A DNA stretch of 64,000 nt from Saccostrea cucullata (taxonomy: Eukaryota): assembly GCF_032062105.1 (NCBI RefSeq), contig NW_026920935.1:372001-436000 (forward strand). Reading direction: 5' to 3'. A model generated the notes under the pieces. The model saw only the letters and a program-made list of their open reading frames with translations, was not told the DNA's origin and ran no database searches. A program made the translations under genes and the position numbers. This document shows positions 1 through 64,000 of the stretch, one piece after another. The stretch's first letter is position 1. Each line of letters starts with the position of its first letter.

Positions 1-42
1 CTTGGGATCTGTTGTAATTTTTCCATGATTATTAATCCTTAC

Positions 43-3000: not shown

Positions 3001-6000
3001 AATCACCAGCCCAGACAGACGCAGTCCCTTGTTATACACCATTGCCTGTGTTCAAAGAGATTAACTAGGCTTTATTATTTCTATTACAGTCAAACCTTAT
3101 TATCTCAAAATTGTACCTTTCCATAGTACTTTCACTTTATATGGATTCATCAAAATAGTACAGCATTAGGAAATTTTCTTTAAAGATTCAAATTAAGAAA
3201 TTAGATTAATGAACATTTTTGCAATATTTTTTGCAATAAATGAATGTATTTGCTTGCAATTTAAAAATATGTAACAAGATACAGTTACCACTTTTAAAAG
3301 GCAGTATATAGGTAGACTGCAAAGTATTCACAGTGTGATAAATATAGTGATCAGTCTTAAATAACTTGATCAGAAACATAAATGAGATAGATGTGTGCTC
3401 CTCAAGTGTATCTTCATACCATTATGAGACGACAAAAAAGTCAACATATACAACCTGATAGTCAAAATAGCAAGTAAGGTAGGAAGCATCCCCCAAAACA
3501 TATTTGTGAAATCTAAAGTTAACTTTACACAGATGAATATGTTCCATTCACCTAAATCTAGGTCAATGTCAAGGTCATCTCTGTGTTTCTATTAAGAATA
3601 TCTTAATTGTCCTAGTTTTCCCAGTTGTGAACATTTCAGATTCTGCTCTAAATAATTCACTACAGAAAAGCCAAACTAAACTGTCGAGTTTGATTAATTA
3701 AGGCATGTTACAACCAATCTATAGACTGTGTTTTGGATTACAGTATAGCTAAATCTACTCTATATGCAAAATTGCAGAAGAAAAAATAAGATAGAAAATG
3801 ATAGCCACAGAAAATACATGTATAATTCAGATCTACATGTAGATAAAAAGGACTCAAAGATTATCATATTCTGTAACCACAAAAAAAAAAATAAGTAGTA
3901 TGCACCACAGCAAGCCCCACATGATTTAAGTGCTCTCCTGAGATGATCCACTGAATGAGTGAAAAACTTAAAAGAAATTAATCTTCTAACACATTACTCA
4001 GACCCTGTGACATTATTTGTGTGTGACCTATTACAGTGTCAGAGTTTTTGATAGATCTGATAACCCAACGAAGTGCATCAAGCATTAAATAACATTCTGT
4101 GAAGTATTCAAAAATTTAAATAATAATAAATAATAATGTTGCTTGTATAAAAATACATGACCATGCAATACATGTACATATATTATGTCAATGGGAGTGC
4201 CAATATTTTTTTTAACTAAAGATACACAATTGTTATTTAGGCAAGGCAAAATATTATTCATGCATATATATTTATCCCAGTAAATATTCCATATTAAAGT
4301 TTTCTTTATTTAGGTTATACTGCTCACCATTCAACTGAGATAACTACTGGTGACCAATGAAAAAAGACAAAGTCATTGATCAATACTAAATAATTATACA
4401 CAAACAGATTTCTGTGAAACAATTTATTACTACATTAGACCAAAGTGGCAATATATGGTACCACGAAATGCTATCAATCATTTCTACAACATTTTAACTT
4501 ACGTACTTTTCTGATTCATCACTTATGTTAGAAAGACATTGATCACATATTTTAAGGCCTAGAAAAAAAATATGTTTGTTTCCACTTTCAGGCTGAAAAA
4601 ATATAGGGTAGGTAGGTAGGCAATTTTTTTTTTTTTGAAAAAATTTTTTTTTGCTTCTTTAATCAAATCATGTATAGAAGTAACATTAATGACAAAAGAA
4701 ATGGTGTTTTCAAGCATTACTGTGACTTAACTTATAATAGAAAGGTGACCCAAACTTCTTTCTGTCTTGAAAAGTTTGCAAAGTTGGAGGCTATAATTCC
4801 CTGGTTGAAATCTTGCACATCATGGGACAAAAGCATTAAAAAAATATTTAGGGTCGGCACTATAAATTAGGGTCGGTCGGGAAAGCGGAAACAAACATAT
4901 TTTTTTTCTAGGCCTAATGGATTTTTTTCTGGTGTTGATTTTGTATTTGATCTTTGAACTTTTAACTCTTAATGACCATAAAAATTTCATTAAATTTATA
5001 TAGAGAAAATTTGAGGCAGACACTACATTTCCAAAAACATGGCTGAAACCTAACTGTACTTTATAGTACATATACCCTACAGAATTAATCCATATGTAAA
5101 TAGAAGATGCTTCTGAATCTTATCAGCATTTAATGTTTTTTTTCTGATGTTGATTTTGTATTTGATCTATGACCTTTGAACTTTCAGACCCTCCTAATGA
5201 CCTTGTTAAGAAATCAATCCCTGATTATTCCTTCATACTTACAATACACCTCCCAAAACATGGGTGAAATATACACTACTTAGCACCATATACCCTACAC
5301 AATGAATCCATATGTAAATGCAAGATGCGTCTGAATATTTTATTTAGATCTTATCAGCACTTATCTAATTCTAGCTAAGAATTTGAGTTTGCTTTTTCTT
5401 TGCTTTATTTTGGCAATTATATCAGAAATACAACATTTTAGAGTTTTCTTTTAGGAATCAAGCAGTGCTCTAATTAGAAAGCGTACCTGTACAGCCACTT
5501 TCAAACTGGCCCCCGTATTTAATGAAATAAATCCATAGAACTGATGACATGCAGCTTGTATTGTGGTTGTTAGTATGAGCACCACAGCTACCACATAACC
5601 ATTGGAGAAAAAATCCGCAACAGTAATGTATCTAGCATGCATGGTCTGCAAGGCAAAAAAATACAATATAAAACAACGACACTTAGTGCAGGTGTACCTG
5701 AATGGAGGCCCTCAGTTTAGCAGCCTCTAATATGACAAGGTAGTGGTGCTGCTGCCACAAGCTGTTCTGTATTACGGTGAGGATCAGTAGCCCAGCGGCC
5801 AGAACATACCCATTAGAAAAGAATTCACTGGCAGTTACATAACTATTAACGTCCTGAAAGGCAATCAATAATTTAGTCATGTTATGATATATTGTTGTGC
5901 TTCTTTTCCATGTATGTTGTTGAAGTGACTTGAGTAATAGGGCAATGTTAACTTAATAAAACTGACTTTCTTAAATACACAGGTGAACAACATTGAATAA

Positions 6001-9000
6001 CATTGAAAAGTGAAAAAAAATTATACATTGTAACTTTTATCAAGTATGTCATAAAAATTGCATAGCTGGGTGGGAAATCTCCAAATTTTAATATTTGCCA
6101 CATTTTCTTATAAATGATAATCACATTACCATATTTAGAGGTGTCGTCATGACAACAGATTGGTTGCCATTGGAAGCTGAGGAGATATTGTACAGGACCA
6201 CAGTCTGGGAGATGTTAGAGACAGCTGAGCTGCCATTGGTTAGATGGCTGTCCTCTTTGAGTTTCACTTGTTCATATGCATAATTTATAATCAGCTCAAT
6301 GCACCAAGGTCCAACAAATTGGATGATGTCTCCGAAAAAACGCAGAAAGCCGGCCAAACATAGATTCTTCCAGAAGACTCGCAGGTACACCTTGTGGAAA
6401 TTGAGTTTTTTGCCATTTCTCTGACTTTTGTCCTACAAAGAGGAGAAACAGATTCAGATCTGTAGTAAATATCCCTTGCTTTTAGGCAAAACATGGGGGA
6501 AAAGTTACACAAAGTCTTCTAATTTTTTGGTAATTTATGTGTTGAAATTCAATTAACTTTAGAGTAAGTTAAAATCTCAGAATGTTTTTTTTTATCAGAC
6601 AAAATATACATGTAAATGTTAGGTAAATGAGCTACAGAATTATGACTTTGTTCAAGCTGATTACAGAAGACTTACCAATTCATCCTCAAATACAGCCTTA
6701 AATCTTCTATACACAGACTCCACTTGTATGTCCTGCAAATGTATATAGATATTTCAAAGACTTCACAATTTTCATTTAATAAATCAAAAATATTTTGAAT
6801 TATTGATGGAGATTTTTTTTCCATTTTCATGATTTTATAAACTTTATGACATTTAAATGATTTAGATAGCATACAAATGTATAAGACACATACTATACAA
6901 GCAAGCAAATTAAGGACTGTGGCTTTTGTTAATCATGATTAATAATGTTTAAAAAACTGTAGAATAAATAAAAAATCCTGATACACTGCATATCTCAAGT
7001 TTTTGGCAAAGTAAAGTGGAAACTGGAAGAATAAATAGAGAAATTACTGGTATACAGATCCATTTGCACATTTTTCATGATTTAGATGACACCATTTACT
7101 AGTGGAGACCAGACTGCATATTTAGACCTCTATTTGGCACTTATGGCCTTTGAGCAGTGAGGAATTTTTTATGCCAGCATCTAAGTACCCTGAAAAAGTC
7201 TCAAACAAAGGACTGGTTTCTGCATCCCACAGTGGAAATCAAAGCTACAATGTAAGGATTAACTCCATACACACAACTCTAGGGAAAATGTACCACCCAC
7301 TGCACCATGTGGGCAACAAGTTTTATTTCACAATCATATTGATGCTATTTTTGGAAAAAAATCTGTTTTTTGCTAGGACTTCTTTCTTGTTTTACTTGGG
7401 GATTACAATATCTGGTATGGGGTCATATGAATATCAATATTGTTACAGCAAAAAACACCTTGACCTGACATTACTATTAGAAAGTGTACAATGACTTTTT
7501 TATAATTGATATGAGATAAACACTGCCTGTATTATGCATTAACAATTACATGTATATCAGCTAGTCTTCACGAGAAAACTTGTGTTCCATCATTATCAGT
7601 CACTGCTCTCTACCTTACGTGTAAGTGGACAGACTTTTAAGTCATCACTCATATCTCCACTGGACTCTGATGGAGTCAATCATTCAAAGACTCAGGAGAC
7701 CCAGTTCCATTTCAATATTGACCTAATTTACTGATCTGGTTGACCTATTAACTATACAGTTGACATGTACCTATTAGACCTGACTTTGTTGGATACATTG
7801 ACAAAATGTGTCTGTCAGCCTAAAAATTCTTCTGTCAAAAAATCTATTTTGTTTTCTCAAGAAATTAGAATTGTTTGCTGATCATCTTAAACCAAATTTA
7901 TGACTATGTAATGGGAAAGGAGAAAATGCAGTGGACCAGACAGGGATTCGAACCCAGGCCTTCAGGTCAGGTGCTCTACCAAATGAGCTATCTGGCCACC
8001 AGCGATCGAACCCAGCTGACCGCCACAACTGAAAAAGTTTTTCAAATATGGAATTAATTTTCTTTCATTAAGATTTAATCTCATTAACTTGATGAAATTA
8101 TTTAAAATAAAAGCAATTAACAAAATAGCTGGAAATTAAAAGGATTTAATTTTCCTTTACTTTATATGAAGTATGGTGTTCATGGTGTTAAACTTTAATT
8201 CACACAACTATGTGATTTAATTGTAAGTTGCAAATAAAGGTTTCTAAACTTATATACCTTATTTTAAAACTATCAAAAATCATGACAAAATTGTATAGTA
8301 ATCATATATGATATATATTGTGTGGTTCATTTGGATTTTGTTTTATCAAATTCACTTGTATTATAAGCTTATGGGGTATAGGACAATACATGTGCTAGAC
8401 GTGTATCATATTCATGGAGAATTTTTTTGTTTGTATGTTCAACATCTTGAACCAGATTTTCACTCATATGGAGATGCTACCATTTGCAATTTTGTGCTAC
8501 ACTCAAGGCTATTGAGCAGTGCAGGAATCTTTTTCATCATCTGACTTCATCCTGCAATATAAGGATCAACTCCTTACTCCGCAACTCTAGTCTAGAGCAG
8601 TCTTCAAAGAGTGCATTTGTCATAATTTTCTGCTATCATGTTACTGTTGAAAGTTATATACCAGAAACATACACAAGGTAGCTTCAATATTTGTTTAAAA
8701 AAATTCTTAAAGACAAAATTGATAAAACTATTCATTTATCTAGAAATCCGATACATCTCTGTCAGAACTATTTACTAATTTAATATTAATTATCAAATCT
8801 TTCTCTCTTTTTAACATTTGAATTTACTTGTATCAAAAAGTAACAATCAATGGGCAAAGGTAATCATCATATTATGATAAAAGAATTTGATATCCACTAT
8901 CCCATAACACCAACATAGTCAATCATTAATCCATAAAATCTATAGTCAGAATGATTTGCTATTTTTATTATATTTATGATAAAAAGGCATAATTGATAAA

Positions 9001-11584
9001 TTTACTTTATTATTTTTTTTTTGTACAATAGTAATCTGATGACCATGATTTTATTATACATACACATATACATATACAGAGAAATTACACATTAGTCACA
9101 TTTTTTAACTTAGATAAGAGTACAGATCAATTGTAAAAGGTTAAAGATCAGTCTTGACTTACACTTAAGTAAATGGCTAAATGTCCTCTTTTTTGGTACC
9201 ATCTATCTAGATATTTCATTTGTTTAAAGCCAATCCTTAGTTAACTCTATCTATCAGATGTTTCCTTCGAAAATGTTACACCTCAAATTCCTTTTCTGAT
9301 AAAATTTAAATCATATATATATTTTTATAAAGTTTGGGATTCAATCAAGACTTTCAAAAATTTTATTGTAATAGTATTTATTTAGGTTTTCCACACTTGT
9401 GTGATATGTCTCTGAATCAACCTTTTTTAAAAGTCCTGCACCTGTATATCCTATAAGTCCTAAATAATAACCTATTGATTATGTCAATCCCTCTTGAGGG
9501 CAGGTCAACCTTATCAATGAAAGAGTGCATTACAACCTTCAATAGTGAAAGGACATGTTAACTTGATATTGTGGTCAGCTCTACTTCAATGGATTTTATT
9601 TGTTCAAACAGCAGATTGAACTCAATACACTGACATGGTCTACATTAAGTTTCTACCACCTGATTTAGTTAACCAAGTTATTACACATTGGAGATTTCAT
9701 ATCATCATTCCTCTCTGGATTAAGTTCCCTATTTACCTTACATGAATATTGACAAGGATATATATTATAATTAGCATACAACAAATGTGAAATGGACCTC
9801 ATTTATCTGCCCTGATAACTCAACTGACCAACCAAAGACAGATGTAAATCTTGTTGGGTTTTTGTTTGAATTATTTACCGAACACTCGATTTTGTCACCC
9901 CATTTCCTATCTCACTCCTCTACGACTGACAACCCTAATCACGCTAATAAAAGCATGTAAATGTGTATTACACACAAACACAACACTATGGCATGTACAG
10001 AACATGCTGAATGTAATTTACAATTCAAACAACAATTCAGCATTCTAATTGTTCTCAAACATGATTGTTAAATACAATTTTTGCAGCATTTTGTTCAAGC
10101 AAGTAAAATAAAAGTCTCACTACACCAATACTATATCAAAATATAGAATTATTATTAATTCAAAGACAAACTGTCAGGAATTTACAGCTTTGCAAAAATG
10201 AGCTAATGAATAAATCCCCATTTTGATTTTACAAGTTGGCATGCATGTCAATTTACAGCATGGAATTTTAGTCTCTTTTGGTTTTCAACAAAACACATAA
10301 ATACAAAATTATGACCCTTAATAAATTAATCAATACAACATGTTTAATAGATATTTAATTCAATTTTCGACATCAGTAGCTCTCAACATGTGCATGATGT
10401 GCATGTGAAATACTAACTATGCTATTTTATTTGTCTCTAATAATTATCTTGTTTTCTGTGCATTTTTTTTTTATTTCATCTGGAATGATGATAATATTTA
10501 CAGAGTTGATTATATAGAAAAATAGGAACTGTTCGATGACAAAAGCGATAAAAAGTGTAACTTCAAACCTTTGGTAAATGTCCAAGGTCTTCCTGCTCAT
10601 AGGGTTTCTTAAAACCATCTGAAAGGAATCCATTTAGCCACCAAAATGTTACTTTGGATAGAAAGTTCACATGCTTGAATACAAATTTGCTTTCTCCAAG
10701 ATCAGGTGGGGTTTTTGCTGGCACTGGATTTTTGAAGAAGGCATATTTCTGTTGTAAAAATTTAAATTATTTTAAACCATTGTCATCATAATTATACAAT
10801 TTATAGCAATAAGACAGTCCATTTCAAAATTATTTTAATAAATTGTTCTTCTCAAGTAACAAACTTCGATCATTATAAATTATATGTACCAGTATAGCTG
10901 TACTGGTATATACTATTTACACATTAATTTAGTAGGAATTCAGAATTTAAAGGGACAAATTTAATTTGTCTTTAAATGACCTTTAGCCTACTGCTCTACT
11001 TTTCACTTCAACATGTTCAATCTTACCTGGACTCTTAGTAAATTAAGTTCAACCGTCAGTAATATCACATAGAATGCCACATCAATCCAAGTTAACCACA
11101 CTCTCACATGGGCTACAGATATACCATTTTTGTGCAATGAAACACCCTTCAATATTTTTATTGGTAACACCGACATCCAATATGCCAAGATTATAAGTAA
11201 AAATCTTGGAGAATTCCACTGTTCTATGTTATGGTAGAATACAAGAGTCAATATAGTTGCTACAAAGGCAATGATCGGTGGTATGAAGACATGGTAATTT
11301 ACAGTGTCAGGATCTTGGGAATCTGACATAAACCCTTCTGCAATTTCGGTGCCAATTATGATAACCAAAGCAAGTGAAAAAAGCCATCTTACATTGTGCC
11401 CCTTGAAATGTACCCATGTTGTTGCATTGTAGTACTTAGACTTGCACCACACAATCAATATAAACAAACTGACAAGCAAAAATATTGCATGTGGCACAAT
11501 GTTAAGAACATCCACAAAGCATTCATTCTTCACAACACCCTCTGCAACACTTCTAGCTTTGTTTTTAGATCCACAAAAAGACAT
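43..11584 (-). CDS. ABCC9: ABC transporter C family, sulfonylurea-receptor (ABCC8/ABCC9)-like; 5' portion (TMD0, L0, TMD1); continues beyond window start
   Basis: Exons (- strand, all GT-AG, phases consistent): 11584-11027 (MSFCGSK...NLLRVQ, TMD0), 10748-10569 (KYAFFK...FLSKVTFWWLN...DLGHLPK, L0), 6732-6676, 6432-6130, [5853-5698 or 5645-5487], 3045-2890 (AMVYNKGLRLS...GQIINHMSQD), 2708-2574, 1177-1015 (SDKRVKKCNEAIQGIKVIKLLAWE), 797-757, 291-43 (ALSTLALFNILTLP...VSMKRLLRFL). The N-terminal FCG and these motifs match SUR1/SUR2. ABCC8 versus ABCC9 cannot be resolved for an invertebrate. Confidence 0.92.
1208..2266. mobile_element. Non-autonomous Tc1/mariner-type element in SUR intron
   Basis: Imperfect ~27-bp TIR (T/C)GAGGGTTGTCCAAAA..TT.GTGGAC at both ends, flanked by TA (1206-1207, 2267-2268); no transposase ORF. 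Confidence 0.85.
4556..4914. mobile_element. MITE with GGCC termini and TAA TSD (PIF/Harbinger- or Zator-type)
   Basis: TIR GGCCTAGAAAAAAAATATGTTTGTTTCC, TSD TAA at 4553-4555 and 4915-4917; internal GGTAGGTAGG/GGTCGGTCGG motifs. Confidence 0.85.
4922..5359. repeat. Diverged two-copy tandem duplication, ~215-bp unit
   Basis: TTTTTCTG.TGTTGATTTTGTATTTGATCT...CCAAAACATGG.TGAAA...CATATACCCTACA...AATCCATATGTAAAT...TCTTATCAGCA occurs at ~4922-5128 and ~5137-5359. Confidence 0.75.
5487..5645 (-). CDS. SUR-like alternative exon B (159 nt, phase 0-0, paralog of exon A)
   Basis: ttgcag|ACC...CAG|gtacgc; TMHARYITVADFFSNGYVVAVVLILTTTIQAACHQFYGFISLNTGASLKVAVQ; colinear with exon A. Confidence 0.85.
5698..5853 (-). 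CDS. SUR-like alternative exon A (156 nt, phase 0-0, TM7 region)
   Basis: ttcag|GAC...CAG|gtacac; DVNSYVTASEFFSNGYVLAAGLLILTVIQNSLWQQHHYLVILEAAKLRASIQ. Confidence 0.88.
7932..8030 (-). repeat. tRNA-derived sequence (SINE head or tRNA pseudogene)
   Basis: Minus strand GGCCAGA TAGCTCATTTGGTAGAGC ... CTGGGTTCGAATCCCTG TCTGGTCC: A box, B box, acceptor-, D- and T-stems present; anticodon arm truncated. Confidence 0.65.
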
Positions 11585-11599
11585 GTTTTCTGTCACTAC

Positions 11600-12277
11600 C
11601 TTGCGAGGAATAAATCTTACTCTGTCATTCTTTGTAATTTACATATTGAAAGTAAAGGTGAAATTATGTTACGCTCGGGCAACAAAGGTCGTATTGCATA
11701 ATAAATAGTAACGGCAAAAACGACCCAAAAAATAAACCCCGTTCAGGTCACAGGGAGAATTCGGCTAAATTGCCAAACAACACTCATGTACTTCTAAATG
11801 CGACTTCCGGTGGGTCAACAAATAGTTAGATTACATGGATATAAATCTAGTGTGAATACAACAGATAAAAGCATTTTATTTAATTTCATTAATTTGCCAA
11901 AATATACTTAAACTAGTATATTGTTTTGAATAAGTCAATCTTTTGAACAAAAAAATTCGAAATATTCTTGCGCGAATTAAATACAGTAAGTCGACTAAAA
12001 ATGCTTCGGTTTAAAATCCCCAAACCTAGAAATCGGATGAACTGAATTATTTTCACGTTAGATTTTATTATAATGATAAATCTTTTGAATAATGAATTAT
12101 TTGATTTTTCATGTTAATGACTGTCATGAAATATTGAGCGTATTTTTAGAATCCGAATCATTAAATGAAATAGTTAACTACGTTGGACAAGAAAAATAAA
12201 TCCTGTATCCATTTGTGTCATTGTGTGTGAGTTCCAAAGCGGAATATCAAGCTCAATTTTAATATCAGTAGTGGACA
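11600..12277. promoter_or_regulatory. Putative bidirectional promoter between SUR-like gene and SPT4
   Basis: Divergent start codons at 11584 (-) and 12278 (+), ~700 bp apart; local CpG enrichment; ETS-like ACTTCCGG at ~11803. Confidence 0.55.
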
Positions 12278-24200: not shown

Positions 24201-27200
24201 CTTTGTAAATGTTGTTAAAATCTCAGATGCATAGAGTTTGTCTTATTTAATTACGCTTACAGGGAATATGGCACCAAAAGGGAGTTGGGGAGCGTTTGGG
24301 GAACATCTGTAACGGTCCCCGTTACAATTAGCACTAGTTGACTTTGAAAAAGCCTTTGATACACTTTCATGGAACTTTATACAAGGTGCACTTAACTTTT
24401 TTAACTTTGGACCCTCAATCAAGAAGTGGGTATCCCTTTTTAATACAGATATTACATCTGCAATAAACCAAGGTGGTAACCTTTCTGATAGAATTAACAT
24501 TCAGAGGGGTTGTAGGCAAGGCGATCCTTTGTCACCATATATATTCATTATATGTGCAGAAATTTTAGCAATCCAAATTAGATTAAATAAAAATATTAAA
24601 GGTATTTCTATAAACAATACTGAAAAAAAGATTTCTCAGTTAGCGGATGATACATCAATTATTCTTGATGGTAGTAAAATGTCCCTCATAAAAAACATTG
24701 CAAACACTTAAGACATTTTCAGAATTTTCTGGATTACATACATGTGTATAAATTATTCCAAAACTCACATAGTGTGGATAGGCTCCAAAAAGTTTAGTGA
24801 TGAAAATTGCTGCCAAATTACAAACTTAACTGGGGAACTACCAGATTTACTCTTCTTGGAATACATTTTGATGTAGAAATGGATAAAATACTACCATTAA
24901 ATTATGAACCAAAACTGGTACATATTAAATCAATACTTAAACAATGGGAGAAAAGGTATTTAACTCCCATAGGGAAAATTACTGTTATTAAAACATTAGT
25001 TCTACCATTACTAAATCATATTTTGATGTCCATCCCAAATCCTTCTGAATCATTCTGTAAGGAATTGGAAAAAATGTTTTTTTCATTTATATGGAATAAT
25101 TCAACCCATAGGGTTAAGAAAGAAGTAATTGTAAAAAAAATGTGAAGAGGGGGGTTTAAAAATGTTAAATCTAACATCTTTTATAGCCTCCATGAAATTA
25201 TTTTGGATAAGGCATCTAATTTTTACAAATAGAGGGTTGGAAAACCTCATTCCTAAATTTAATTTGAACAAATTTATAAGTTGTGGAATTGAATATACTT
25301 CAACTTTTTTAAAAACATTAAAAAATAAATTTTGGATAGATGTTTTTAAGTCCTGGATAATGTTACAAAATCTTGAGAAAAAGTTTGATGTTGCTGGTGA
25401 CTCACCACTATTTTACAATCCACATTTGCATATTGGCGGAAAACCATTTTATAATAAAAATATGTTTGAGAGCAACATTAGACAAATTAATGATATCATT
25501 AATGAAGATGGTTCACTATTTTCTTATGAGCAGTTGTGTAACACCTATCCAAATATAAAGATTAATTTCTTAGAATTCAGGAGTATTATTCATGCTATAA
25601 AGGATTGGATGAAAAACTCCGGTCAGGAAAAAACAATAAAAAAGCTCACAAATCCCATGATTATGTCTAATATCTACACAATAACAAAATGTAGAAAATC
25701 AAAATGCTATTATGAAATCCTTATTCAAAATTCTTCTGTCACAGCAGGTAGAACTTATTGGAGTGAGCTTTTAGAAGTTGGAACTCAGGAATGGAAAAAA
25801 ATTCACATGATACCCTTTAGGGTAACAAAAGATTGTAAACTACAATGGTTCCAATATAGGATTTTAAACAAAATCCTAGCAACAAATTCATTTTTATTCA
25901 AAATAAAAAAAAATGACTGTAAATTATGCAGTTTTTGTCATACTGAGGATGAAACAATAGAACACCTTTTATGGGAATGTGATAATACACAATTTTTTCT
26001 TGAAGAATTTGTACATTTGTTAGAAGAAAAAACTGGTTTAATGATAAATGTTACTAAGAAATCTTTTATTTTAGGATTTATTGAGGAAAATACTGATATT
26101 CAAAATGTTATTCTACTTTGGCTAAAATACTATATTTATACTGCCAGGTGCACAAAGAAACATATTAACTTACAAAATGCAATATCACAAATGAAATTTC
26201 ATTATGAAACACAGAAAATTATCTCTTATAAGAATGGTAAAAAGGAAAAGTTTGATACCCAGTGGAACAGGTGGAATCTGCTATTCTCTTAAACTTGAAT
26301 CTTTACACATTCTCTTTCTTTTCTCTCTCTCTCTGCTCTCCCCTCTATCTTTCTCTCTATCGTTTCTATCTCTCTTAAAATAAAAAAAAACACAGCAGTC
26401 AGTTTCTTTTGAAATATGTTTATAATGATGTATGTTGTGTGAATAAAAAAAAAAAAAAAAAAAAAAATTGCTTAGAATGACAATACATTGAGATAACAGC
26501 AGTGCAATAAATTCACAGCAGTAGGCTTCGTAGTAATCAACATGAGGTCATATAATTCGGTTGTAAAAATTAGTGATATATCAACTTGATAAATGACCAT
26601 CGATGTTTTATTGCTGAATTGCTGAATGCAGAACATTGTAATTAGTTGCTAAAATACCCAATTGCCATCTTCTAATGCTGCGGTGGTCATTAAAAGATAC
26701 AGTTATAATATGGGTCACACTTTTGACTTTAGTTAAAAATAGATCAAACTACAGGGTGTTGCTAAAAAATATACCTGACTCTACTTTAACTTTGTTGTAT
26801 TTTTAGAAAAATTAATTTTATCTCTTTATATTTTATTTTAAAAATAATTACTGACATAAAATATGTTTACATAAGACCTATATATGTTTTACTTCACGTA
26901 CTGCTAAAAAATTTACTTCACTCTACTTTGTTGTATTTTCTAGAGAAGTTAATTTTATCTCTTCATATTCTATCTAAAAACAAATTACTGACATAAAATA
27001 TGTTACATAAGATCTATGCATGTTTTACTTCACTTACTGGTTGATGTATTAATACCAAATCAAAAATAAAATTTTATTCAATGTTTTAATGATGATGTTA
27101 ACTCTTAATTAATTTCAATGAATTAATTTAATTTTAATTTAGTTTCACTTCTGAGCATTTGACTAAAAATTTAAACATATCATTTCAAAGCTAACCTTTA

Positions 27201-49242: not shown

Positions 49243-50787
49243 TCAGCCTTGAGAAATGTATTTATAAACACTGATATCACCATTCTTGCCACCAACCCAT
49301 AAACAAGACTTATGAAGATCAACCGAGTATGGCGAATCGAACGCTTCTTGCTTTGTCACGAGATAACGAATGAATTCACCGCATGAACTCAACATGTGAA
49401 TGAAGTTGTGGAGGCAATCTGTCACAATTATGTTACACTGAGCATCGCACACAAGACCTCTCGGATCGAAACGTTTTCTGACGTAGTTTCCGCGGTAATC
49501 AAATTTGAGCGCGCCATCTGACGAGAGAACTCGGAGGACGCCGCTTGATTGGCCAGTCTGGTCTATGACGCAAATATCGCTGTTATAGTTGTGGAAAACA
49601 CGATGAGGTTTGGTGAAAAGTTTTGTGGTTCCATCTTTGTCAAATTCATATGTCGTCAATTCCTCCCCAGCAGGTGAGATCAATTTGATCAAACGTTTAC
49701 TACTTGTGCTTAGTTTAAAACTGTAATCGTCTACTAAGGCAACAAACAGATTCCCATCCAGGGCTTTCCCAATTCCTATTGGTGTAAGTGGCTTTGTTGA
49801 GACAAGGGTTGATATTGTGCCACTTTCGTCCAATTTCTTGACTTCGTCGTTTTCAAAATCTGTGAATATTTGAGCTCCATCAGAACACACGATAAAGTCA
49901 TTTGAAACACTTTTCATTTCTATTGAATTTTTAGTAACTCCGCTTGTGTTAAGCAGGTAGGCACTGCAGTCCCATCCATGGACCCATGCAGCTTCCTCTG
50001 ACACAGAATGGATGGACACAATCGTGTTCGAAAAGTTTTTAAAGTTTGCTAGCCTTATAACTTTTACGTGTTCTGGGTCTATCAGCTTGCCATACATAGT
50101 TTCCAGGGCGGCGTGATCCATTGTACCCTTGAAGAAACAAGGGAGATAACCGTAAGCCGTCAAATCAATGTTATTAACTTCGGTGATCAGCGCCTCCGCT
50201 TCGTTTTTTGTCTCGATTAGTTGAAATCCAGACATGCAACCGGACTGTGTTTCCAGAAATCTTGCCTTGTCTTGCAAGTCTTGTTTAAAGTTGCTGAGAT
50301 TGGTCTTCAAGTTGACAAGCCTTTGTTGACAGCGCGTGTATATTTCTTTGGACTTCTCGATATTGAAATTAGTAATCCTGAAGACCTCTGTCGCCATATC
50401 ATCTTGCTGCCTGACAAGCTTTCTGATTTGACCCGAGTGTCTCTTTTCCTGCTCGTATTCTATTTGGTTGATGAACGATAAGCTTTCTGTAATTTCATGG
50501 ATGCAGCCTCGTATCCCCTGGCAGATTTCTGGGATATCCTTCTTTTTCTCGGCAGATATCTTCTTAATGCTTCCCCATCTATGGTCCTTATGTTCTGTCT
50601 GGCCACACGTCACACAGAAGATGGTCTTGCAATCTTCACAACACATATCCCGGTCCTCGTCATGCTTCCTACATAATGGAAGCACACCCCTAGAGCTCCC
50701 AAATGTAAACTCTCCCATACCAAACTTTAGCTGAGCTTCACAATATAAAGCTTCCTTACATGTTTCATGTTTGAGGCAATGGCTCAT
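49243..50787 (-). CDS. RING-less TRIM-like protein: B-box, coiled coil, NHL-like beta-propeller (514 aa, single coding exon)
   Basis: B-box CRKHDEDRDMCCEDCKTIFCVTCGQTEHKDH; heptad region; propeller motifs PIGIGKALDGNLFV, PHRV..N.NSDICVID, FDPRGLVCDAQCNIIVTD, PYSVDL...LWVG. Confidence 0.88.
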   Translation of the reverse strand: MSHCLKHETCKEALYCEAQLKFGMGEFTFGSSRGVLPLCRKHDEDRDMCCEDCKTIFCVTCGQTEHKDHRWGSIKKISAEKKKDIPEICQGIRGCIHEITESLSFINQIEYEQEKRHSGQIRKLVRQQDDMATEVFRITNFNIEKSKEIYTRCQQRLVNLKTNLSNFKQDLQDKARFLETQSGCMSGFQLIETKNEAEALITEVNNIDLTAYGYLPCFFKGTMDHAALETMYGKLIDPEHVKVIRLANFKNFSNTIVSIHSVSEEAAWVHGWDCSAYLLNTSGVTKNSIEMKSVSNDFIVCSDGAQIFTDFENDEVKKLDESGTISTLVSTKPLTPIGIGKALDGNLFVALVDDYSFKLSTSSKRLIKLISPAGEELTTYEFDKDGTTKLFTKPHRVFHNYNSDICVIDQTGQSSGVLRVLSSDGALKFDYRGNYVRKRFDPRGLVCDAQCNIIVTDCLHNFIHMLSSCGEFIRYLVTKQEAFDSPYSVDLHKSCLWVGGKNGDISVYKYISQG

Positions 50788-51399
50788 TTTAGACCGAAGC
50801 GCTTATCCCCATAGGTCAAACAGTTTTGCGTCCTGTTTTATTTCCATATAGTGTCAAAATGTGGAAGGTACCGATTATTCTTTTTTAAATAAATGTGCCA
50901 TTGAAATGGAATCACACATGGGAAATAGATAATTAAAAATGAGGAAGTAAACAAAATAAACTGATACTGTTACAATTGATCCAAGGAAAATGTTTGTAAA
51001 TAGTGGATGGCTTTCGGCTCAAAGAGGAAGAGGATCAAAGAATTGTATTTAATGACCACAAACAGAAAGATTAAATATATTTTTCCAAAGTGGAAAAAAG
51101 TCCGTGAACTGCTAAACAGATCGTCTTAGCAATTGCACAACTCTCAGATAATATCCATCATGTATATGTATGTGTAGGCCTATACGTTGAAAATTTTAAC
51201 ATTTCCTTAGATGATTTTTATGACGTAGTTTATTTAAATTCTTTAATCACGTAAATAAACTTTTGACACAGTTTCATGTGAACGTTGAGACGTAACAATT
51301 ATTCATAACTTTTCTTCATGCATCTGATTTAAAAGTCCAGACAGATTACTAACTCGCGCTGTCTATGCCCCCAAGGTGCCCTGATAGCTTTTATTAGCT

Positions 51400-52152: not shown

Positions 52153-54856
52153 ATGTTCACTATGGACGACCGGATGGAAATTTTCAAACTGGCGCAATCC
52201 TATAAGATAAAATGGGAACTACTACTTGAAAGCAAGGTGCACGATGAGCTTTGTGCACATGCGCAGTCCTTAGGATGTGAACTGGATCTGCTACTATTAC
52301 CTGTGTTTGTGTCTGTAGCCAGTGCAATGGGACCCAATACAAAGGTCAAGGTTACCAAAAGTTGGACAGAATATCTTAACCTTACTGGCATTGTAGCAGC
52401 AAGACGAGGTGAAAGAAAGTCGACAGTATTAAATTGTATTAAAACTTGTAGTCGACACATGAAAAACTTCAAAGACGACAAAGAAATAGAGGACAAACCC
52501 CAGGTCGCGGTCATAGACGAGTCCTTTGTAGATAACATTACAGAAACCTGCAGAATCAGGGGAAGTCGTATGTTTATTATAGACGACCTTGACAATGTTA
52601 TTAAAGAGGTGATACAAATACCTGATATCTGGAATCTTCGCACCTTGCAATCGTCCTTGACCTCTTGTTCAGAACAGAATGGTGGTCCTCCTAGCAACTG
52701 TGTAAACGTCATAGCAGCGGTCCAGGCAGCCAATATCTCGGAGATCGTTAACTTGCCTGACCCGGGGCGGCTTGTGGATAGGATTTTAGTTTTGTGTGCA
52801 AGGGATTCTGAAGATATTGTGACATCTATCAAACCAAGTGAAACTTTAGATACAATACTCCAAAAGATATACGATTTACATGTTGATAAAGATGTTACTT
52901 ACACATTCAGTGAAGAGGCGACACGAGAGTTTGAGAGGTATACTTCCAAAAGATTTGTTTACTGAAAATCAAGAAGGTTCCTGTGTGTCTCAGATAGATT
53001 TATTTAAATTATTTTGCACTATGATGACTGGAGATTGATGATCTTCGTATATAAGCATTTAAACTGCTTTTAAAATAATTTAAAATAACTCCTTTCCGTC
53101 TTGGAAAATATATACCCAGTATATAAAAATGACATGTACTTTTGCATATGCAAGCTTTGTCTTAAAGTGTTATACATCTCGCTTTCCAATAAAAAATTGG
53201 ATTTAATACATTATATTTACTTAAAATGACATCTTTCTAAGTTTTTTTCCTTCTTGCTTTTTCAGAATGTCCGGAGTAGTCAATTCTCTTAAAAAACAGT
53301 GCCATAATGATGAACTGAAACGAGGTTGAAACTCATGTGGAATCATCCTCAGGTAGTGTAGAATCAAGTTTGTTCAAATCATGACCCCCGGGGCTAGGGT
53401 GGGGCCAAAATGCAAGTACTTCAAAGCTATGACTTGTGATATTTATATAGAATCATCCTCAGGTAGTGTAGATTCTAGTTTGTTCAAATGATGAACGCCG
53501 GGGGGGGGGGGGGTGGAGTAAATTTAAGCCTGATGTGCTCAGGTGAGCGCTGTAACGTTTCTCGCTTGCTTTTTCAGAATGTCCGGAATAGTCAATTCTC
53601 TTAAGAAACAGTGCCATAATGATGAACTGAAACGAGGTTGTGCTAATCACGTGATGTCCCAAATGGCGCGATTAAGCGTCATATCAACTGCTTTGACGGC
53701 TGCAATGACAGAACCCAACACAGATTTTACCATAACCAAAACGACTGTGCAGTCTATGTTTGTTGTCTCGCTGTACCTGCTGCGACAAAAATGTCTGCTG
53801 CTACATGGATCTGACAGTGCTACATACTCCGAACTATTTCACTCTATTCTTAGTAGTGAAGTTGAGCTACTTACATCGATGAATACTACAAATGAATTCA
53901 GTGGGAGAGAGAACGAAGATGACGTCATAGAAATCACTCTGGATGGCAACAATGAACCCGTTGCCAGAATTATACCAAAACGTGACGACTCAGTGGAGAC
54001 CAATGGCGACGAACCAGCTCGGAATCAGCAATCTGACGTCACCATGTGGACAATGGAGAACAGAGACAATGCCACTAGCCAGAGTGAGCGAGAAACAAGC
54101 AGCGTGTATTATCCAAGTGCACCACAGGAAGTGATCGGTCACCCCAAACACCCTCCACTTAATCAAGAGACAAGTAATCGCCAACATTACGAACCAAATC
54201 AAACACTACCTCTGGATGGCGACAGTAAACAGTTTAACAATTCTGGCGTTCTTCGACCAAGAGGCAAATTTCGTCCTCCACCTCCGCCATTAAAACTTCG
54301 ACCACATCAGCTTCATGTGAACCGTCGATTTATTCCTGCCCCCAAACGTTTGACCGACAAAACACAACTCAAAACATGCATATTCACATGCAGTGATAGT
54401 ATTTTTGTACAACTGTGTTGCGCTAAAATCAGAAAATGTCTGTTGACAAAAGGAGTATTCATCACTTCCTCCTACGCCTGCCAGTACCGCCTTTTCCCGC
54501 CCGTTCCCCTGGTACAGAGGACGTCTTCTCCGCGGACCACCCATCCATCGTGGGCGGCCGTGAAATTCTTTGAACGTTTAGAATCTCTTGGCTTTGGCGA
54601 GGTCATGGTCTTTCGTTCACAGTCGGTAAAATTTAGAAAGAAGTCTCTAGAGGAAATGTCAGAAAAAGCGAGGACAATACTAAGACAGGTGGGGATCACT
54701 GATGAGGACTTCAGATCTTCTCTGACGACGGAGGAGGAAGTTCAGGGGTCCATACAGGAGTATAATTATATTTTCACCGTCCATCAGAACGGGGAGATCG
54801 AAACTGAACAAATGCAGCAGATGGAGGTTGAGCAGAAAGTCCATCAGCAGACGTAA
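52153..54856 (+). CDS. DUF3987/YfjI-like (MCM-clade-like AAA+) protein, ~687 aa, two coding exons
   Basis: Exons 52153-52937 (ends GAG AG|gt) and 53578-54856 (cag|A ATG), phase 2. Motif order VASAMG...W.E.LNL.GIVAARRGERKS...FIIDD...NVIAAVQ...G.L.DRIL...YTFSEEA..EF...QMARLS...ITK.TV matches DUF3987 as recalled. Confidence 0.72.
53253..53640 (+). repeat. 76-bp duplication of splice acceptor and exon start flanking a HINE 3' fragment
   Basis: Copies 53253-53328 and 53565-53640 (2 mismatches); spacer holds CATCCTCAGGTAGTGTAGA..CAAGTTTGTTCAAATCATGACCCC units and CTCAGGTGAGCG as in the 35390 HINE. Confidence 0.88.
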
Positions 54857-56472
54857 AACAGTTTTTTTGCCCACGACTGAGTAACAAAGTCCGAATATGT
54901 TATTATCACATCGATTAATACTGTTACAAATCAAAATAAAAAAAAAAATATTCTGTCTTTTCTTATAATATTGGTTTTGTCTACTTTTCCCTCATAGCAG
55001 CTAAAACATAAATGTATTTTAAAGACTTCTAGGAGGTGGATTCAGGATGTTCAGCATAGAAAGGGGTTTGGGTGCTGAATAAATTCATACCTCAAAGAAA
55101 CAAATAAAATGAAATTGATTGTTTTATTTATTTTCTATTTAATGAACGTGCTTTAAATGCTACATGATTAGAGATGGTAGGTTCCCTTTTTTTAACATAA
55201 ACATTTCTGACATAACAAAGACCTTCAAAGAAAATTTCAGTGGTCAAATATGCCCCCTGTTACGTGGCTGTTGAATTTAATAAAATATTTATATCTTTAA
55301 GGAACCGTCCAAGCTGTTGGGTATGAAGAACTTGGAATTTTAATTTATATTCAATTGCCAAGATATGAACAATCAAACAGCCATTGCAATACAGATAGGT
55401 TAATCTGACGAATAAAACGATTGTTGTAACTAAGTCATGTTGATATCTGTCGGAGAGGTATCGATTTCGATCATCAGCTGACTATGAATGGACAGATACA
55501 TATATACTGTAGTATATCACCACGGTCCGGTAACAAGGCTCGTCGTTAATTACGCAAGGTCCTCTTAAGATTTTAAATTTAGTTCTGTAAAATCCTGTCC
55601 ACGTGGTCCGGGATTAAGAGATCAGTTGTGTGTACAGACAGGCAGCATGGCTCTGTTTACGTGTCACTGAATCGTTCATAACAAAGTACCATCCGGCGCT
55701 ATAGGGGTGGAGGAGCATACCTACAAGGGCGCTGACCTATATTGTGCTAGGTAAGTGTTATTTTCCATTGAGATTTTAAGACTCCTTCCCACCCCCTTCA
55801 CCGAACTATCACCTTCTAAACTATATGGAATAGGTAAAAGTATTTTTTTTTTGGTAGTGTTGATTTAGCATATGAAATATTTATTTAAGGCAATTGTAAA
55901 CAAAACGTAAAGAGAAAACATCGTTTTTCATGAGATGGAAGATAAGTATATTTATTATATATTGGAGAGAATCTTTCTCGGGTTGTTCCATTGAACACCC
56001 TAGAAATTAAGTGTCTCACTTAATAAATATATAGAATTTCATTTGTTATGTTATTTAGTAAACTACATTATCGTTAATAGTCGTTTTTTGAACCATGCAC
56101 TTACAGGTTATCATAATACCTTGGGAGAAAAACACGATTGTGACAGTAATTAAAATGAGGTTAAGGTCAAAGGAAAGGTCAGGGCAAAAAAAAATATGTC
56201 AATGAATTTTGGATGGCTCTGATTATAAAGTATCAGCATATGAAAAGTTTCTTTGACACAAGGACAGAAGACTATGATATACACTATTAATAAATTCAAA
56301 ATTTATTTTTTATCTTCAATTAAGTTATTTCCGGCGGATGTCCCTTTTCACAGCAACAATAGTGCACATCTGTTCTCCTCTGGAAAGAAGAGAGATCTTA
56401 TTAAACCCTGACACAATTTCCCCGATTCATCATTTCTCCTTTTTATGTTAGAACACAGATGACACTGAAGAC

Positions 56473-58747
56473 ATGGAAAATATAGCTCTAAACGACCAAA
56501 ACAAAACGGATGAGTAAGATTTATTATACACTCTCTATGGCTTCCTTCAGAGGGTTTATTTAAGTTCAAGTTTATGATTTTGTTTTTGATTGTTAATTTT
56601 GAAAGAAAATCTTTTGTTTAAATCTTAGCAAAAGTATATGCTGATGTAAGTTATAACTGTGCTAGTATTAAACTGTTTAATTTTATTACAGTAAACAGAA
56701 TCCGTCTCGATCACAGTCTTCGGCAAATAAAGTTTATCCAACAGGGTCCTTTATACATAATTCTGATGTGGAGCCATCTTTCGAAAAGGACGAACATATC
56801 TACTGTTTCAGGAACGCCAAAAAAGGATACGCTGTTCTTATAATGAATTATGAGTTTGTAGATGAAGACGAAAATTTACCTGGAGTAAAACGTGACCTTG
56901 AAGATATGTCCAAACTATTTGATTCTATGGGTTTTGAAGTGAGGGAGTTTGTTAATCTTACAAATGTAGAACTAGTATCAGAGCTTGAAGGTAGGTATCC
57001 ACTGATTGTGTAATGCTTTCACCAATTAAAGAATACTGTAGACTGTGTAAAGCTTTGAGTGTAGTCCATACATTTCAATAGTATTTTCAGGGACAAAAAA
57101 CAAACTTGTCAAATCCTGAAAACCTATTTTGATAGTGAAGTGAGAAGACATTTCTAATTTACTCTCAGTACATTGTTTAAAGTGGTCCTTTTCTATGGAG
57201 CGTGGAAGATCATTTTTTGTTACTTTTTCATGGAAATTGAATAACAGTTATTGAAAAAAAGCATGGAGGATCCGAGCCTTGAACTTTCCCCCAGTAATAT
57301 AAAGTGTCTTGTTTTAGGTATCCGAAAGGAGATGCCTAGTGATTGTGACTGCTTTGTATGTGTCATCAGTACCCATGGAGGAGAGGATCCAGGATTTTAT
57401 AATGGTTATCCTAAAGAATCATTTACAAAGACCGAGCACTATCTGTTGAACACGGAAGGCGCAGTCTGGACACGGCAGATTGTAGGCATGTTTAACAATC
57501 AGCAATGTAGAGCACTCAAAGGGAAACCCAAGTTATTCTTCATTCAGGTCAGAGCACCTTAAGAATAAACTAATTTCACAAAATATCTGTACGAGAACAA
57601 GGCATTTGAACATTTAAAATATTTATTATCGCATTGTATTTATTAGGCTTGTCGAGGAAGGGGTGTAGATAAAGGTGTTGATTTGTTAGAAAATAACGGC
57701 GACGAAAGTGACGACGATTCTGTAGACAAGGAAGTGTTCCAAATCCCATGTTACAACGATTCCTTGGTGATGTTTTCTTCTACCTCAGGTATTTAGATAT
57801 ATATTGACGAAAGTTTTACCTAAAAGCACTATTTATGTCTACTTTTACCTAACACAACATTGATATTTTCCTCCCCCAATAATATCGTTTCATCGGTCAA
57901 TATACAACCTTTTTAAAGAATTCATCTACTCAATGTAAGGTAAAAAGTAGTTTTTGGACACATGGGTAACTCGGGTTACATATCACCACTCCTCCCTCAG
58001 CATGCCGGGGGTTGAGAAGGGGAGGGGCAAAAACAAATCAAAATAATGCAATCTTTTCATTTGATTTCTCAAGTTCCCAAAATATCTATGGCAAAGTCAT
58101 TTGTCTCACTGAATTCGGCGACTTGTACTTTTGCAGAGTCGGAAAAAATGTTTCTTCATCTTTTCTTAATTTGTTTTAGTTTTAACTTTGTATGGGCAAC
58201 AATGAACAGCTTATCTCTCTCAAAAAAGCCAACAAACCAGTCAAGGAATAAAACAAAAATTGAAAATTGCTTATCAAAATATAAGAAGTACACTTGTATT
58301 GAAATATATCTGCAAGAAAGTATGTTTTAGTCATCAAATATAGACGCAAACTAACATTTTTAAAGGATTATATTTGAAATACTCGTGTTATGCCATCAAG
58401 AAACAGAATTTTATTCTTATTTAAATTGATCATTTTCAAAATACTTTTAATTCACCAGCTGCAAAGGATGCTTGGACAATAAACTACACATTGAATTTTT
58501 TCCAGGTAAATATGCGTGGTCTGAAGATTTGGAAGGTGGCTGGCTTCTCTCAGCCTTACAAAAGGTGTTTTCCAGTAATACTGGGGAGGACCTACTTTCA
58601 CTTTTGACACAAGTTTGTGGAGATGTGGCGACTAGAGAAGCATTTATACCGTGTAACAAGAGGGCCCATCAGTCAAAGAGCACCGCCTGCATTTATCACA
58701 AACTGTCTAAAGACATTCATTTTCCTCCGTTCAAGCTTAAAAAATGA
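56473..58747 (+). CDS. Caspase (peptidase C14A), short prodomain, ~317 aa, atypical S1 pocket
   Basis: Exons 56473-56513, 56692-56990, 57318-57547 (CFVCVISTHG...LKGKPKLFFIQ), 57647-57788 (ACRG...), 58506-58747; 954 nt, phases consistent; probable 5' UTR exon ending at 55750. The start codon is less certain. Confidence 0.9.
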
Positions 58748-61556: not shown

Positions 61557-64000
61557 ATGGAGCCGGAACATCAGGAGAAAGAGTTTCGTGAAAACTTGGA
61601 AGATTTAACCGAGGGTAAGAATAGATTAAATCGACCGTGCTAGATAAAAGCTTACAATGTTGGTCCGATAATTTTAGTTAAGTTATGAAATATGATGTTA
61701 TCTCAATGATAAAGAATTTCATCTAGTAAGGTGTAACGAGTTTCCTATGTAATGACAGTGAATGTCAAACTGTTCATCTGTGTGTGGTTCACGCCGTTTG
61801 GATCAGAAGAAAAGAAAAACTTGACCCAAAACTCGTCAATATTAGTGCCTCTTGAATAGACTAACTTATAAAGATATGACAAACAACAAAAGAAAACTTC
61901 CGTCCTTTTAATAATTATATATATAATAAGCCAGAACATGGCAAATATTCTGCAGACTTCGTGTTTAGTTTTAGAAATGCTAAAGATCGACTTGTTTTGT
62001 TTTAGGGAGGATTACAATTTGCTGCTTCTAGAAGTCCTGAATACATTGTATTTGTTTTTTCTGTAGATTACACTGACAACTATCAAACGACTAAAAATGT
62101 CAATAGAAATATTGATAACATATCGTTAGTGACCTAACAATGCAACACGAATCACCTAACGCATAAAAAAAAACCCGTATGTCCAGTCACGAGACTCAAG
62201 GACTTTCGTTTTTTAAAAAAGAGGAAATTTGAGTACATACAGACGTGCATATCATTATGCATCCGAAGTCTGCATTTTTCCTTCTACGTACCACAATTTA
62301 CTTTAGCATTGGTGGCACAATTTTATATTATGATTACCGAGAGATGAATGCTTTGGAACGGAAGAAATATTGAATTCATGTATCAAAAGTTATATAATCA
62401 GAATCAGTCTATTTAATATTTTATTTCGAACATTTGTCAAATATCATGACCGAAAATTAAATATTGTGGAATTTCAGTAAAGAAAGTGTATTTGATAAAA
62501 ATTCCTCTCGCTGCTAATTATTTTATTTATTTCAAAATAATCCTTTTATTACTTATTAAAATTACTAGAAATAAAAACTCTTTTACAGAATCAGAACCTG
62601 ACGGACTGAAAGCTGCCTTCAACAAAACACTGAAAGAGTAAGAAATTTTCTGGCTAATTAAATCTTATTAATACATAAGTCGGTCTTTTATGGTGTTTAT
62701 AGGAAGAAATATACATTTCTTGGAATTTTTTCAATAATTCTAGATCATTTGATAAAAAAGTTGAGCTCGTGGAACCTTGATGTCCCGTATGACAGTTTAA
62801 CAAACACGTTTTTAATGGAAGCTATTTATATACAGAGTTCTAATATACTCCCAAAAACTCTACAATACGGAATAGTCATTTGATCACCATATGAGGACAT
62901 TGTCGTTAACCCAAATTTAGTTGTAAAAAGATCGCACATAAAAAAAATCAATAAAGAATTAAACTCTTGAAAGTTGATATTTTAATAGTTTGTGAGGTAA
63001 GGAATAGAGCAAATAATAAAGGCAAACAATGTCGATGATGAGGCGTCAACAGACGGTGCTTAAATTTCTGAGTAGCTGTTAGTCAGTGTAAAAGATATCC
63101 TGTTACTTGTTTAAGTGCTCATACCTGTTCTGTTTAGATACACTAATCACCCTTACTAAGGTTTTGTTCTTTTCAAACTGTGATAAGAATCTAGAAGGAC
63201 CGTCATTGTATCATTGGACCATATGATAATTTGTCCCTATAAGGCTTACAATTTTTAAGGAAGATAATACCTGACTGTATTACACCTGTCAAATTCTTTA
63301 TTTTCAGTTTTCTTGGTCTTAAGTCGAAGAAAAAGAAAAGAAGAAATGGACCTCCCTCAGAAACCAATATCGACGAAGATAAAACCGGTCTTTTGGAGAC
63401 TCGAACCAATCAGAACAGCCGGAAACCACGTGCAGTTCCCAGCGTACCAGAGTCTGAAGATACCATACGTCAATCACAGGGCTCCGAAGAACTCAACTGG
63501 TCATACCCAGAGTCGTCCCGCCCACAAACCGATCATGGCCACCAGCCGTCTGTTGACGATACCAGATACAACTTCCGCCACGAGAAGATCGGTCATGCTG
63601 TCCTTGTAATTAACAGTATATTTGACAGCCAATCTGAAAGAAAAAATGCTGCATGGGATTTATACTTCATGCGTAAAATGTTCCAGGAGATGGGGTTTGA
63701 AGTAAACGTTCTTGAAAACCTTACTTCTAGAAAACTTCTCACTGAAATGAAAAGTAAACAGTTTTTGGTAACATTTTGCTCCAATAACTCAAAATTCATT
63801 GTAAAAATGAATTAAGATCTAGAACCGTTTGAAATGTTATCATTTATTTTATTTCGATAGCTTAACTGATTTAAATTAATAGTGATGTGGTGCTTGTAAA
63901 TGAATTACAGGTATACAGAAAAGCATTACTGAAGAATCGGACTGTTTTGCCTGTGTCCTCAGTTCACATGGTATGGAGGGACAAACAAGCACTAAGGGGA
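61557..64000 (+). CDS. Second tandem caspase (partial; runs off window end)
   Basis: Exons 61557-61614 (MEPEHQEKEF...), 62589-62637, 63308-63753 (...YNFRHEKIGHAVLVINSIFDSQSERKNAAWD...GFEV..LENLT), 63911->64000 (DCFACVLSSHG); phases consistent and the visible intron positions match the upstream caspase. Confidence 0.85.

What the first reader, a model, noticed from the sequence alone, without database searches (positions are those of the whole stretch)
56473..58747. Caspase with intact His/Cys dyad but both aspartate-binding S1 arginines replaced
Seen: the catalytic STHG and QACRG motifs are intact and the frame is open across five exons. Where caspase-3 has S-R64-SGTDVD this protein has N-L-PGVKRD, and where caspase-3 has SW-R207-N it has AW-S-E. 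GSWF becomes GGWL and a ~15-aa insertion follows HG. Established: these two arginines (caspase-1 R179/R341) together with the QACxG glutamine confer P1-Asp specificity, and an L-x-G...D pattern here is typical of non-Asp C14 relatives such as meta/orthocaspases. Inference: this is an animal caspase-fold protease with altered, non-Asp P1 specificity, or a catalytically intact decoy.
Basis: partly seen in the sequence, partly recalled or inferred. Interest (0 to 1): 0.85.

Follow-up and report, generated by a model that had tools for sequence, protein, structure and literature searches.

The report
Oyster caspase lacking aspartate-binding arginines
Oysters keep, under purifying selection, a caspase with intact catalytic residues but without either arginine that lets caspases cut after aspartate, so it is either a caspase with a different cutting preference or a catalytically equipped decoy.

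Summary
Confirmed. The locus is an intact five-exon, 317-aa caspase gene in Saccostrea cucullata. His133, Gln190 and Cys192 are present; the caspase-3 R64 position is Leu76 and the R207 position is Ser243. This is not private decay. Leu is kept in all six oyster sequences tested (two Saccostrea species, two Magallana-like species, two C. virginica copies), and none has Arg at the second site. dN/dS is 0.20, and the Magallana-like orthologues occur as spliced mRNA. The M. gigas orthologue is Cg3/7D of Vogeler 2021, catalogued with no comment on its S1 pocket in the main-text passages I read. The loss was stepwise: R207 is already absent, with GSW changed to GGW, in scallop, mussel and pearl-oyster relatives and in the tandem neighbour; R64 to Leu is oyster-specific in my sample. 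The insertion after HG is family-wide. The metacaspase/MALT1 likeness is partial: at most one of three acidic S1 residues. Best reading: active protease with non-Asp P1 (0.5); rival: decoy or partner subunit (0.35). No activity data exist here, and expression of this copy was not tested. The scan noted this stretch before (s1-707327), not on other DNA.

The parts
55545..55750 (+). Probable non-coding first exon / promoter-proximal block (inferred; ends ...TAG before a GT donor at 55751)
   Evidence: 77% identical in S. echinata; 55567-55621 matches the 5' UTR of orthologous spliced transcripts L024 and L029
56473..56513 (+). First coding exon from the ATG (acceptor AG probably at 56450-56451)
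   Evidence: S. echinata has an ATG-led exon in the same place
56692..56990 (+). Coding exon 2: short N-terminal peptide, beta1, loop L1, helix alpha1
   Evidence: PF00656 32.3 bits
56876..56878 (+). Leu76, at the caspase-3 R64 / caspase-1 R179 position
   Evidence: Leu in 6/6 oyster orthologues, Arg in 27/27 R207-less relatives
56894..56896 (+). Asp82 on helix alpha1 (caspase-3 D70; matches the MALT1 D365 / TbMCA2 D95 position by my own recollection of those sequences)
   Evidence: Asp in 6/6 orthologues and 30/31 two-Arg caspases
57318..57547 (+). Coding exon 3: catalytic His133 (57374), oxyanion Gly134, insertion (57383-57436), Gln190 (57545)
   Evidence: PF00656 41.7 bits
57647..57788 (+). 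Coding exon 4: catalytic Cys192 (57650), short acidic intersubunit linker (57689-57727), start of the small subunit
58506..58747 (+). Coding exon 5: small subunit and stop
   Evidence: PF00656 26 bits
58520..58522 (+). Ser243, at the caspase-3 R207 / caspase-1 R341 position
   Evidence: Ser in 5/6 orthologues, Phe in one C. virginica duplicate
58538..58540 (+). Gly249 (GSW to GGW), which co-occurs with loss of R207
   Evidence: Gly in 6/6 and 27/27 R207-less sequences; Ser in 27/31 two-Arg caspases
61557..64000 (+). Tandem paralogue (XP_062597260, Cg3/7C-type, 485 aa), runs past the window; keeps R64 but has W-S-D at the R207 site

Best explanation
An oyster (Ostreidae) member of the mollusc caspase-3/7 expansion, orthologous to M. 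gigas Cg3/7D, that lost aspartate recognition in two steps. Shown: an older bivalve branch lacks the small-subunit Arg (R207 to Ser/Gly/Cys, with GSW to GGW), and the oyster lineage also changed R64 to Leu while keeping the fold, His/Cys, Gln and the S2 Trp. Inferred: it is still a protease. Its S1 pocket, lined by Leu76, Val79, Gln190 and Ser243 with an unpaired Asp82 at the base and extra acidic residues around the groove, would take a neutral or basic P1 rather than Asp. With a short N-terminal peptide and a short acidic linker it would most likely be matured in trans by an Asp-cutting caspase, or work uncleaved as MALT1 does.
For: Leu 6/6, non-Arg at R207 6/6, and His, Gln, Cys 6/6 across Saccostrea, Magallana-like and Crassostrea sequences. 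dN/dS 0.20 tree-wide, 2-delta-lnL 220 against omega=1; 0.08-0.14 between genera excluding the CvB duplicate; 0.18 between the two Saccostrea. Intron-less contigs encode the orthologue in many sequencing runs. Orthologue model pLDDT 91.9, closest to caspase-3, Z 31.7, rmsd 1.6 A. The Leu clade (100/100) lies in a 99/99 clade with 13 R64+/R207- relatives. His, Gln, Cys are invariant in all 27 R207-less relatives, whereas other oyster caspase-like genes did lose the His (L018, L020). Groove charge is -4 to -6, against means of -2.0 and -2.3 in the other groups with the Arg sites left out.
Against: No enzymatic data. 53% of positions are invariant among the six orthologues, so keeping His and Cys within this clade alone is weak evidence (about 0.28 by general constraint). 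R341 also anchors the substrate at P3 (PMC12550167), and an R341K change is taken as grounds for calling mouse caspase-12 a pseudocaspase (PMC11121540). Only one of three MALT1-type acidic S1 residues is present. The groove positions were my choice and the six sequences are kin. I had no model coordinates, so pocket geometry was not measured.
Confidence: 0.5

Rival explanations
1. Catalytically silent or nearly silent decoy / partner subunit (cFLIP-L-like) that heterodimerises with, or competes with, its tandem neighbour or other caspases; His and Cys persist through general structural constraint.
For: Both Asp-binding Args are lost with no complete replacement set. It is tandem with a related caspase in S. 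cucullata, S. echinata and C. virginica, as cFLIP lies beside caspase-8 (PMC11121540). Conservation of the dyad within the clade is not distinguishable from background.
Against: Known decoys, and other caspase-like genes in this genome, lose His or Cys; here His, Gly, Gln, Cys and Trp are all kept. The new S1-lining residue (Leu) is itself invariant.
Confidence: 0.35
2. It keeps weak Asp/Glu-directed activity using Gln190 and a substitute basic side chain or exosites.
For: Vogeler 2021 (PMC7836458) cites DEVDase activity for Cg3/7, whose close paralogue Cg3/7A has R64 but Asn-Arg at the R207 site, and RNAi effects on apoptosis for Ch3/7, which has R64 and W-S-E. So loss of R207 alone may be tolerated.
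Against: Those members keep R64 and this one does not. No conserved Arg/Lys occurs in L1 or at 243-247, and position 244 is acidic. I could not read the primary Cg3/7 and Ch3/7 papers. The purified DEVDase of Wang 2024 (PMC11543851) is, by residue numbering, probably a two-Arg member (my inference).
Confidence: 0.12
3. A decaying or mis-modelled gene, or the C-terminal part of a DUF3987-caspase fusion protein.
For: Public gene models in C. virginica (1064 aa) and S. echinata (1053 aa) join the upstream DUF3987 gene to this caspase.
Against: Open frames and low dN/dS rule out decay. The DUF3987 gene has its own stop at the equivalent place in three species, and orthologous transcripts have in-frame stops upstream of the caspase and no DUF3987 sequence.
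Confidence: 0.03

Closest known systems
M. gigas Cg3/7D (XP_011454107) in the bivalve caspase-3/7 group, Vogeler et al. 2021 (PMC7836458)
   Same: Orthologue: the paper's alignment row matches the exon-3 and exon-5 proteins P0001 and P0160 (machine-read PDF). The neighbour corresponds to Cg3/7C.
   Different: In the main-text passages I read the paper scores His and QACxG and says Cg3/7A-J are potentially functional; the S1 arginines are not discussed there. I did not see the Cg3/7D exon-2 residue directly.
Effector caspases-3/-6/-7 (MEROPS C14A)
   Same: Fold (TM 0.80, Z 31.7), dyad, QACRG, S1 Gln, short prodomain, S2 Trp
   Different: Both S1 arginines absent; insertion after HG; GGW
Mollusc long-linker caspase-3/6/7 (Wang 2024, PMC11543851)
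   Same: Same family, tandem duplications
   Different: Linker here is about 26 aa between QACRG and FQIP, not 63-286; the assayed member is probably a two-Arg paralogue (inference)
MALT1 paracaspase and metacaspases (C14B, Arg/Lys P1)
   Same: Leu six residues before the alpha1 Asp (from my own knowledge of those sequences); no S1 Arg
   Different: Gln instead of Asp462/Asp211, Ser instead of Glu500 (residues per PMC4357240); structurally farther (Z 22 and 19); nests inside true caspases
cFLIP-L and mouse caspase-12 (pseudocaspases)
   Same: Tandem with a related caspase; caspase-12 has a dyad plus R341K (PMC11121540)
   Different: Dyad intact, unlike cFLIP; both Args lost, unlike caspase-12; no death-fold prodomain
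Mytilus caspase-2 and caspase-3/7-4 (Romero 2011, PMC3037946)
   Same: Arg341 substitution in mollusc caspases was noted and altered specificity suggested
   Different: Arg179 was kept in all of them; different clades

Membership tests
Caspases (C14A) | Caspase fold | tested here: met
   Tested on orthologue P0152 (71% identical): pLDDT 91.9, Foldseek E 5e-24, best VIA hits caspase-3/-8/-9
Caspases (C14A) | His-Gly and QACxG catalytic motifs | tested here: met
   His133, Gly134, Gln190-Cys192
Caspases (C14A) | S1 Arg179 (caspase-3 R64) | tested here: not met
   Leu76; 6/6 orthologues
Caspases (C14A) | S1 Arg341 (caspase-3 R207) | tested here: not met
   Ser243; Ser or Phe in orthologues
Caspases (C14A) | S1 Gln283 | tested here: met
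   Gln190 invariant
Caspases (C14A) | Cleavage after Asp | not testable with these tools
   Needs an assay
Caspases (C14A) | Maturation by cleavage in the intersubunit linker | tested here: inconclusive
   Linker is acidic in all six with two aligned Asp, but DESD is specific to Saccostrea
Bivalve caspase-3/7 group (Vogeler 2021) | Phylogenetic placement and orthology with a named member | tested here: met
   Within the 51-row 100/99 clade that holds Cg3/7A and Ch3/7 cluster members; matches the Cg3/7D row
Long-linker caspase-3/6/7 (Wang 2024) | Intersubunit linker of 63-286 aa | tested here: not met
   About 26 aa
MALT1 / metacaspases (C14B) | Acidic residue two before the catalytic Cys (D462 / D211) | tested here: not met
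   Gln190 (PMC4357240)
MALT1 / metacaspases (C14B) | Acidic residue at the R341 position (E500) | tested here: not met
   Ser243; an acidic residue lies one later, at 244
MALT1 / metacaspases (C14B) | Asp on helix alpha1 (D365 / D95) | tested here: inconclusive
   Asp82 is present but also in 30/31 ordinary caspases; residue-level equivalence rests on my memory, not on a tool alignment
Pseudocaspases (cFLIP type) | Loss of catalytic His or Cys | tested here: not met
   Both intact in 6/6

The most novel reading that the evidence does not exclude
A true animal caspase (C14A by descent) that has switched to cutting after basic residues, reaching MALT1/metacaspase-like specificity independently through a traceable series: two Arg, then R64 only, then none.
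Probability: 0.2. Interest if true: 0.87.

Novelty: new variant of a known kind. Interest (0 to 1): 0.62.

Why it matters
Aspartate specificity defines animal caspases, and reviews describe the R179/Q283/R341 pocket as conserved across all of them (PMC12550167, PMC11121540). A selected, orthologue-wide loss of both arginines with the dyad intact, plus living one-Arg intermediates in scallops, mussels and oysters, gives a natural series for asking how clan CD enzymes change P1 specificity. It also means that several bivalve genes labelled caspase-3, -6 or -7 in expression studies may not be DEVDases. If it is a decoy, it would regulate by loss of substrate binding rather than of catalysis, which is a smaller but still useful result.

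Tried and rejected
Private decay: rejected by orthologues and dN/dS. Misalignment hiding an Arg: rejected, since there is no Arg in loop L1 or at 243-247. DUF3987-caspase fusion: rejected as a likely gene-model artefact. Relay from a canonical Asp-caspase neighbour: the neighbour also lacks R207 and the DESD linker site is not conserved beyond Saccostrea. Single origin of R207 loss: suggested by the quick tree (88) but unresolved in the careful tree, so not claimed. Single-sequence folding failed (pLDDT 40). The ESM Atlas gave only generic caspase clusters. Five paper searches aimed at S1-arginine loss found no report on this clade; subscription journals are not covered.

Full report
Gene model. 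The stretch holds five coding exons with GT-AG introns that translate to 317 residues without a stop. Three exons pass the Pfam caspase cut-off on their own. The neighbouring gene's protein is annotated as Saccostrea cucullata XP_062597260 on a contig of the same length as the window's, which identifies the genome. The joined protein was used only in local scripts; remote searches were run exon by exon or with natural orthologues.

The observation. His133, Gly134, Gln190 and Cys192 are intact. Leu76 occupies the R64 column: a paralogue in this genome reads P-R-PGVKRD where this gene reads N-L-PGVKRD, and 27 of 27 sampled R207-less relatives have Arg there. Ser243 aligns with the W-R / H-R of solved caspases. 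No conserved Arg or Lys lies in loop L1 or at 243-247 to take over.

Not private decay. An exon-3 search led to full-length orthologues: C. virginica XP_022341801 and a second C. virginica copy beside it, two Magallana-like transcripts of unnamed species and a syntenic S. echinata gene. All six have Leu at the first site; five have Ser and one has Phe at the second. Codon analysis gives omega 0.199 over the tree, with 2-delta-lnL of 220 against omega = 1 (that tree omits S. echinata and includes a second allele), 0.08-0.14 between genera when the divergent duplicate is left out, and 0.18 between the two Saccostrea species. The two C. virginica copies differ at omega 0.53, so the younger duplicate may be relaxing. 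The orthologue cluster has 48 sequence variants in Logan assemblies, and the contigs read are intron-less, so orthologues are transcribed.

Family and order of events. The M. gigas orthologue is Cg3/7D in the bivalve caspase-3/7 group of Vogeler 2021, matched through a machine-read supplementary alignment. In a 72-protein tree built without the trait columns, the six Leu sequences form a 100/100 clade inside a 99/99 clade with 13 oyster, scallop, mussel and pearl-oyster proteins that keep R64 and lack R207. R207 was therefore lost before R64 in this line. Two further R207-less groups (Ch3/7 type and Cg3/7A type) are unresolved relative to it, so a single loss is not shown. GSW to GGW tracks R207 loss (33/33, against Ser in 27/31 two-Arg caspases). 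The insertion after HG also occurs in two-Arg paralogues, so it is unrelated to the S1 change.

Structure. An alignment-based model of orthologue P0152 has pLDDT 91.9 and is closest to caspase-3 (Z 31.7, rmsd 1.6 A), ahead of MALT1 (22.3), cFLIP (21.8) and metacaspases (19.3 or less).

Mechanism. Shown: fold, dyad, loss of both arginines, selection, order of loss. Inferred: the S1 lining is Leu76, Val/Ile79, Gln190 and Ser243 with Asp82 beneath, and groove-flanking positions carry a net -4 to -6, about 2.5 more negative than relatives even after discounting the two Arg sites (my choice of positions, related sequences). That points to a neutral or basic P1. It is not a MALT1 pocket: D462 and E500 (PMC4357240) correspond to Gln and Ser here, and the alpha1 Asp is common to ordinary caspases. 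For activity: His, Gln and Cys are invariant in all 27 one-Arg relatives, while other oyster caspase-like genes lost the His. Against: within the Leu clade 138 of 262 positions are invariant, so dyad retention there proves little, and R341 also anchors P3. I put active non-Asp protease at 0.5, decoy at 0.35 and residual Asp activity at 0.12. One-Arg relatives have reported function (Ch3/7 RNAi lowers apoptosis; Cg3/7 DEVDase; both as cited in PMC7836458, primary papers not read), but they retain R64. A speculative driver, untested: OspC-family effectors, present in Vibrio, modify exactly the R207-equivalent arginine (PMC9239266), so its loss could reflect escape.

Surroundings. The downstream tandem caspase keeps R64 but has W-S-D, so it is not a canonical Asp-caspase, which weakens the relay idea of note s1-707327. 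Public gene models in two other oysters fuse this caspase to the upstream DUF3987 gene. The DUF3987 stop is conserved in three species and orthologous transcripts are free-standing, so the fusion is probably an artefact; it may also be why no full-length Saccostrea protein came up in the homologue searches.

Novelty. The gene has a catalogued orthologue, and a single Arg341 substitution in mussel caspases was noted in 2011 (PMC3037946). I found no report of the double loss or of the wide R207-less clade in the open literature searched. Verdict: a real, conserved new variant of animal caspase whose function is untested; interest 0.62.

Noticed in passing
window 61557-64000 and beyond; L007, L008, L011-L014; P0013, P0020, P0045, P0153, P0157, P0278: A large set of bivalve caspases annotated as caspase-1/2/3/6/7-like keep R64, Gln and the dyad but lack R207 (W-S-D/E/N, or S/N-R and G-R with the Arg shifted by one). 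This includes the published Ch3/7 (QHE23272) and Cg3/7A.
   Followed up: partly
window 52153-54856: Spliced DUF3987 gene directly upstream, syntenic in S. echinata and C. virginica, where public models fuse it to the caspase; its stop is conserved in all three.
   Followed up: partly
window 53253-53327 and 53565-53640: Near-duplicate of the start of the DUF3987 last exon, including its acceptor.
   Followed up: no
L028:4540-8391 and 10001-15144: C. virginica has two copies of the Leu caspase; the second has L-P-P and W-F-D, an allele has HGR and W-C-D, and omega between copies is 0.53.
   Followed up: partly
L018:4699-4860, L020:4909-5178: Caspase-like genes in this genome with His replaced by Tyr (LSYG); L020 also has W-Y at the R207 site.
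   Followed up: no
window 20202-26289: LINE-type retrotransposon (coiled-coil ORF1, endonuclease, reverse transcriptase, zf-RVT), broken into several frames.
   Followed up: no
window 49246-50802 (-): Single long ORF with a B-box zinc finger (TRIM-like).
   Followed up: no
window 1-11638 (-): Exons of an ABCC/SUR-like ABC transporter (TMD0 domain at 11006-11638).
   Followed up: no
G000:C12409:154000-204000 (L011-L015): Tandem array of at least four Cg3/7-type caspases with Glu in place of the alpha1 Asp in those read and the shifted Arg at the R207 site.
   Followed up: partly
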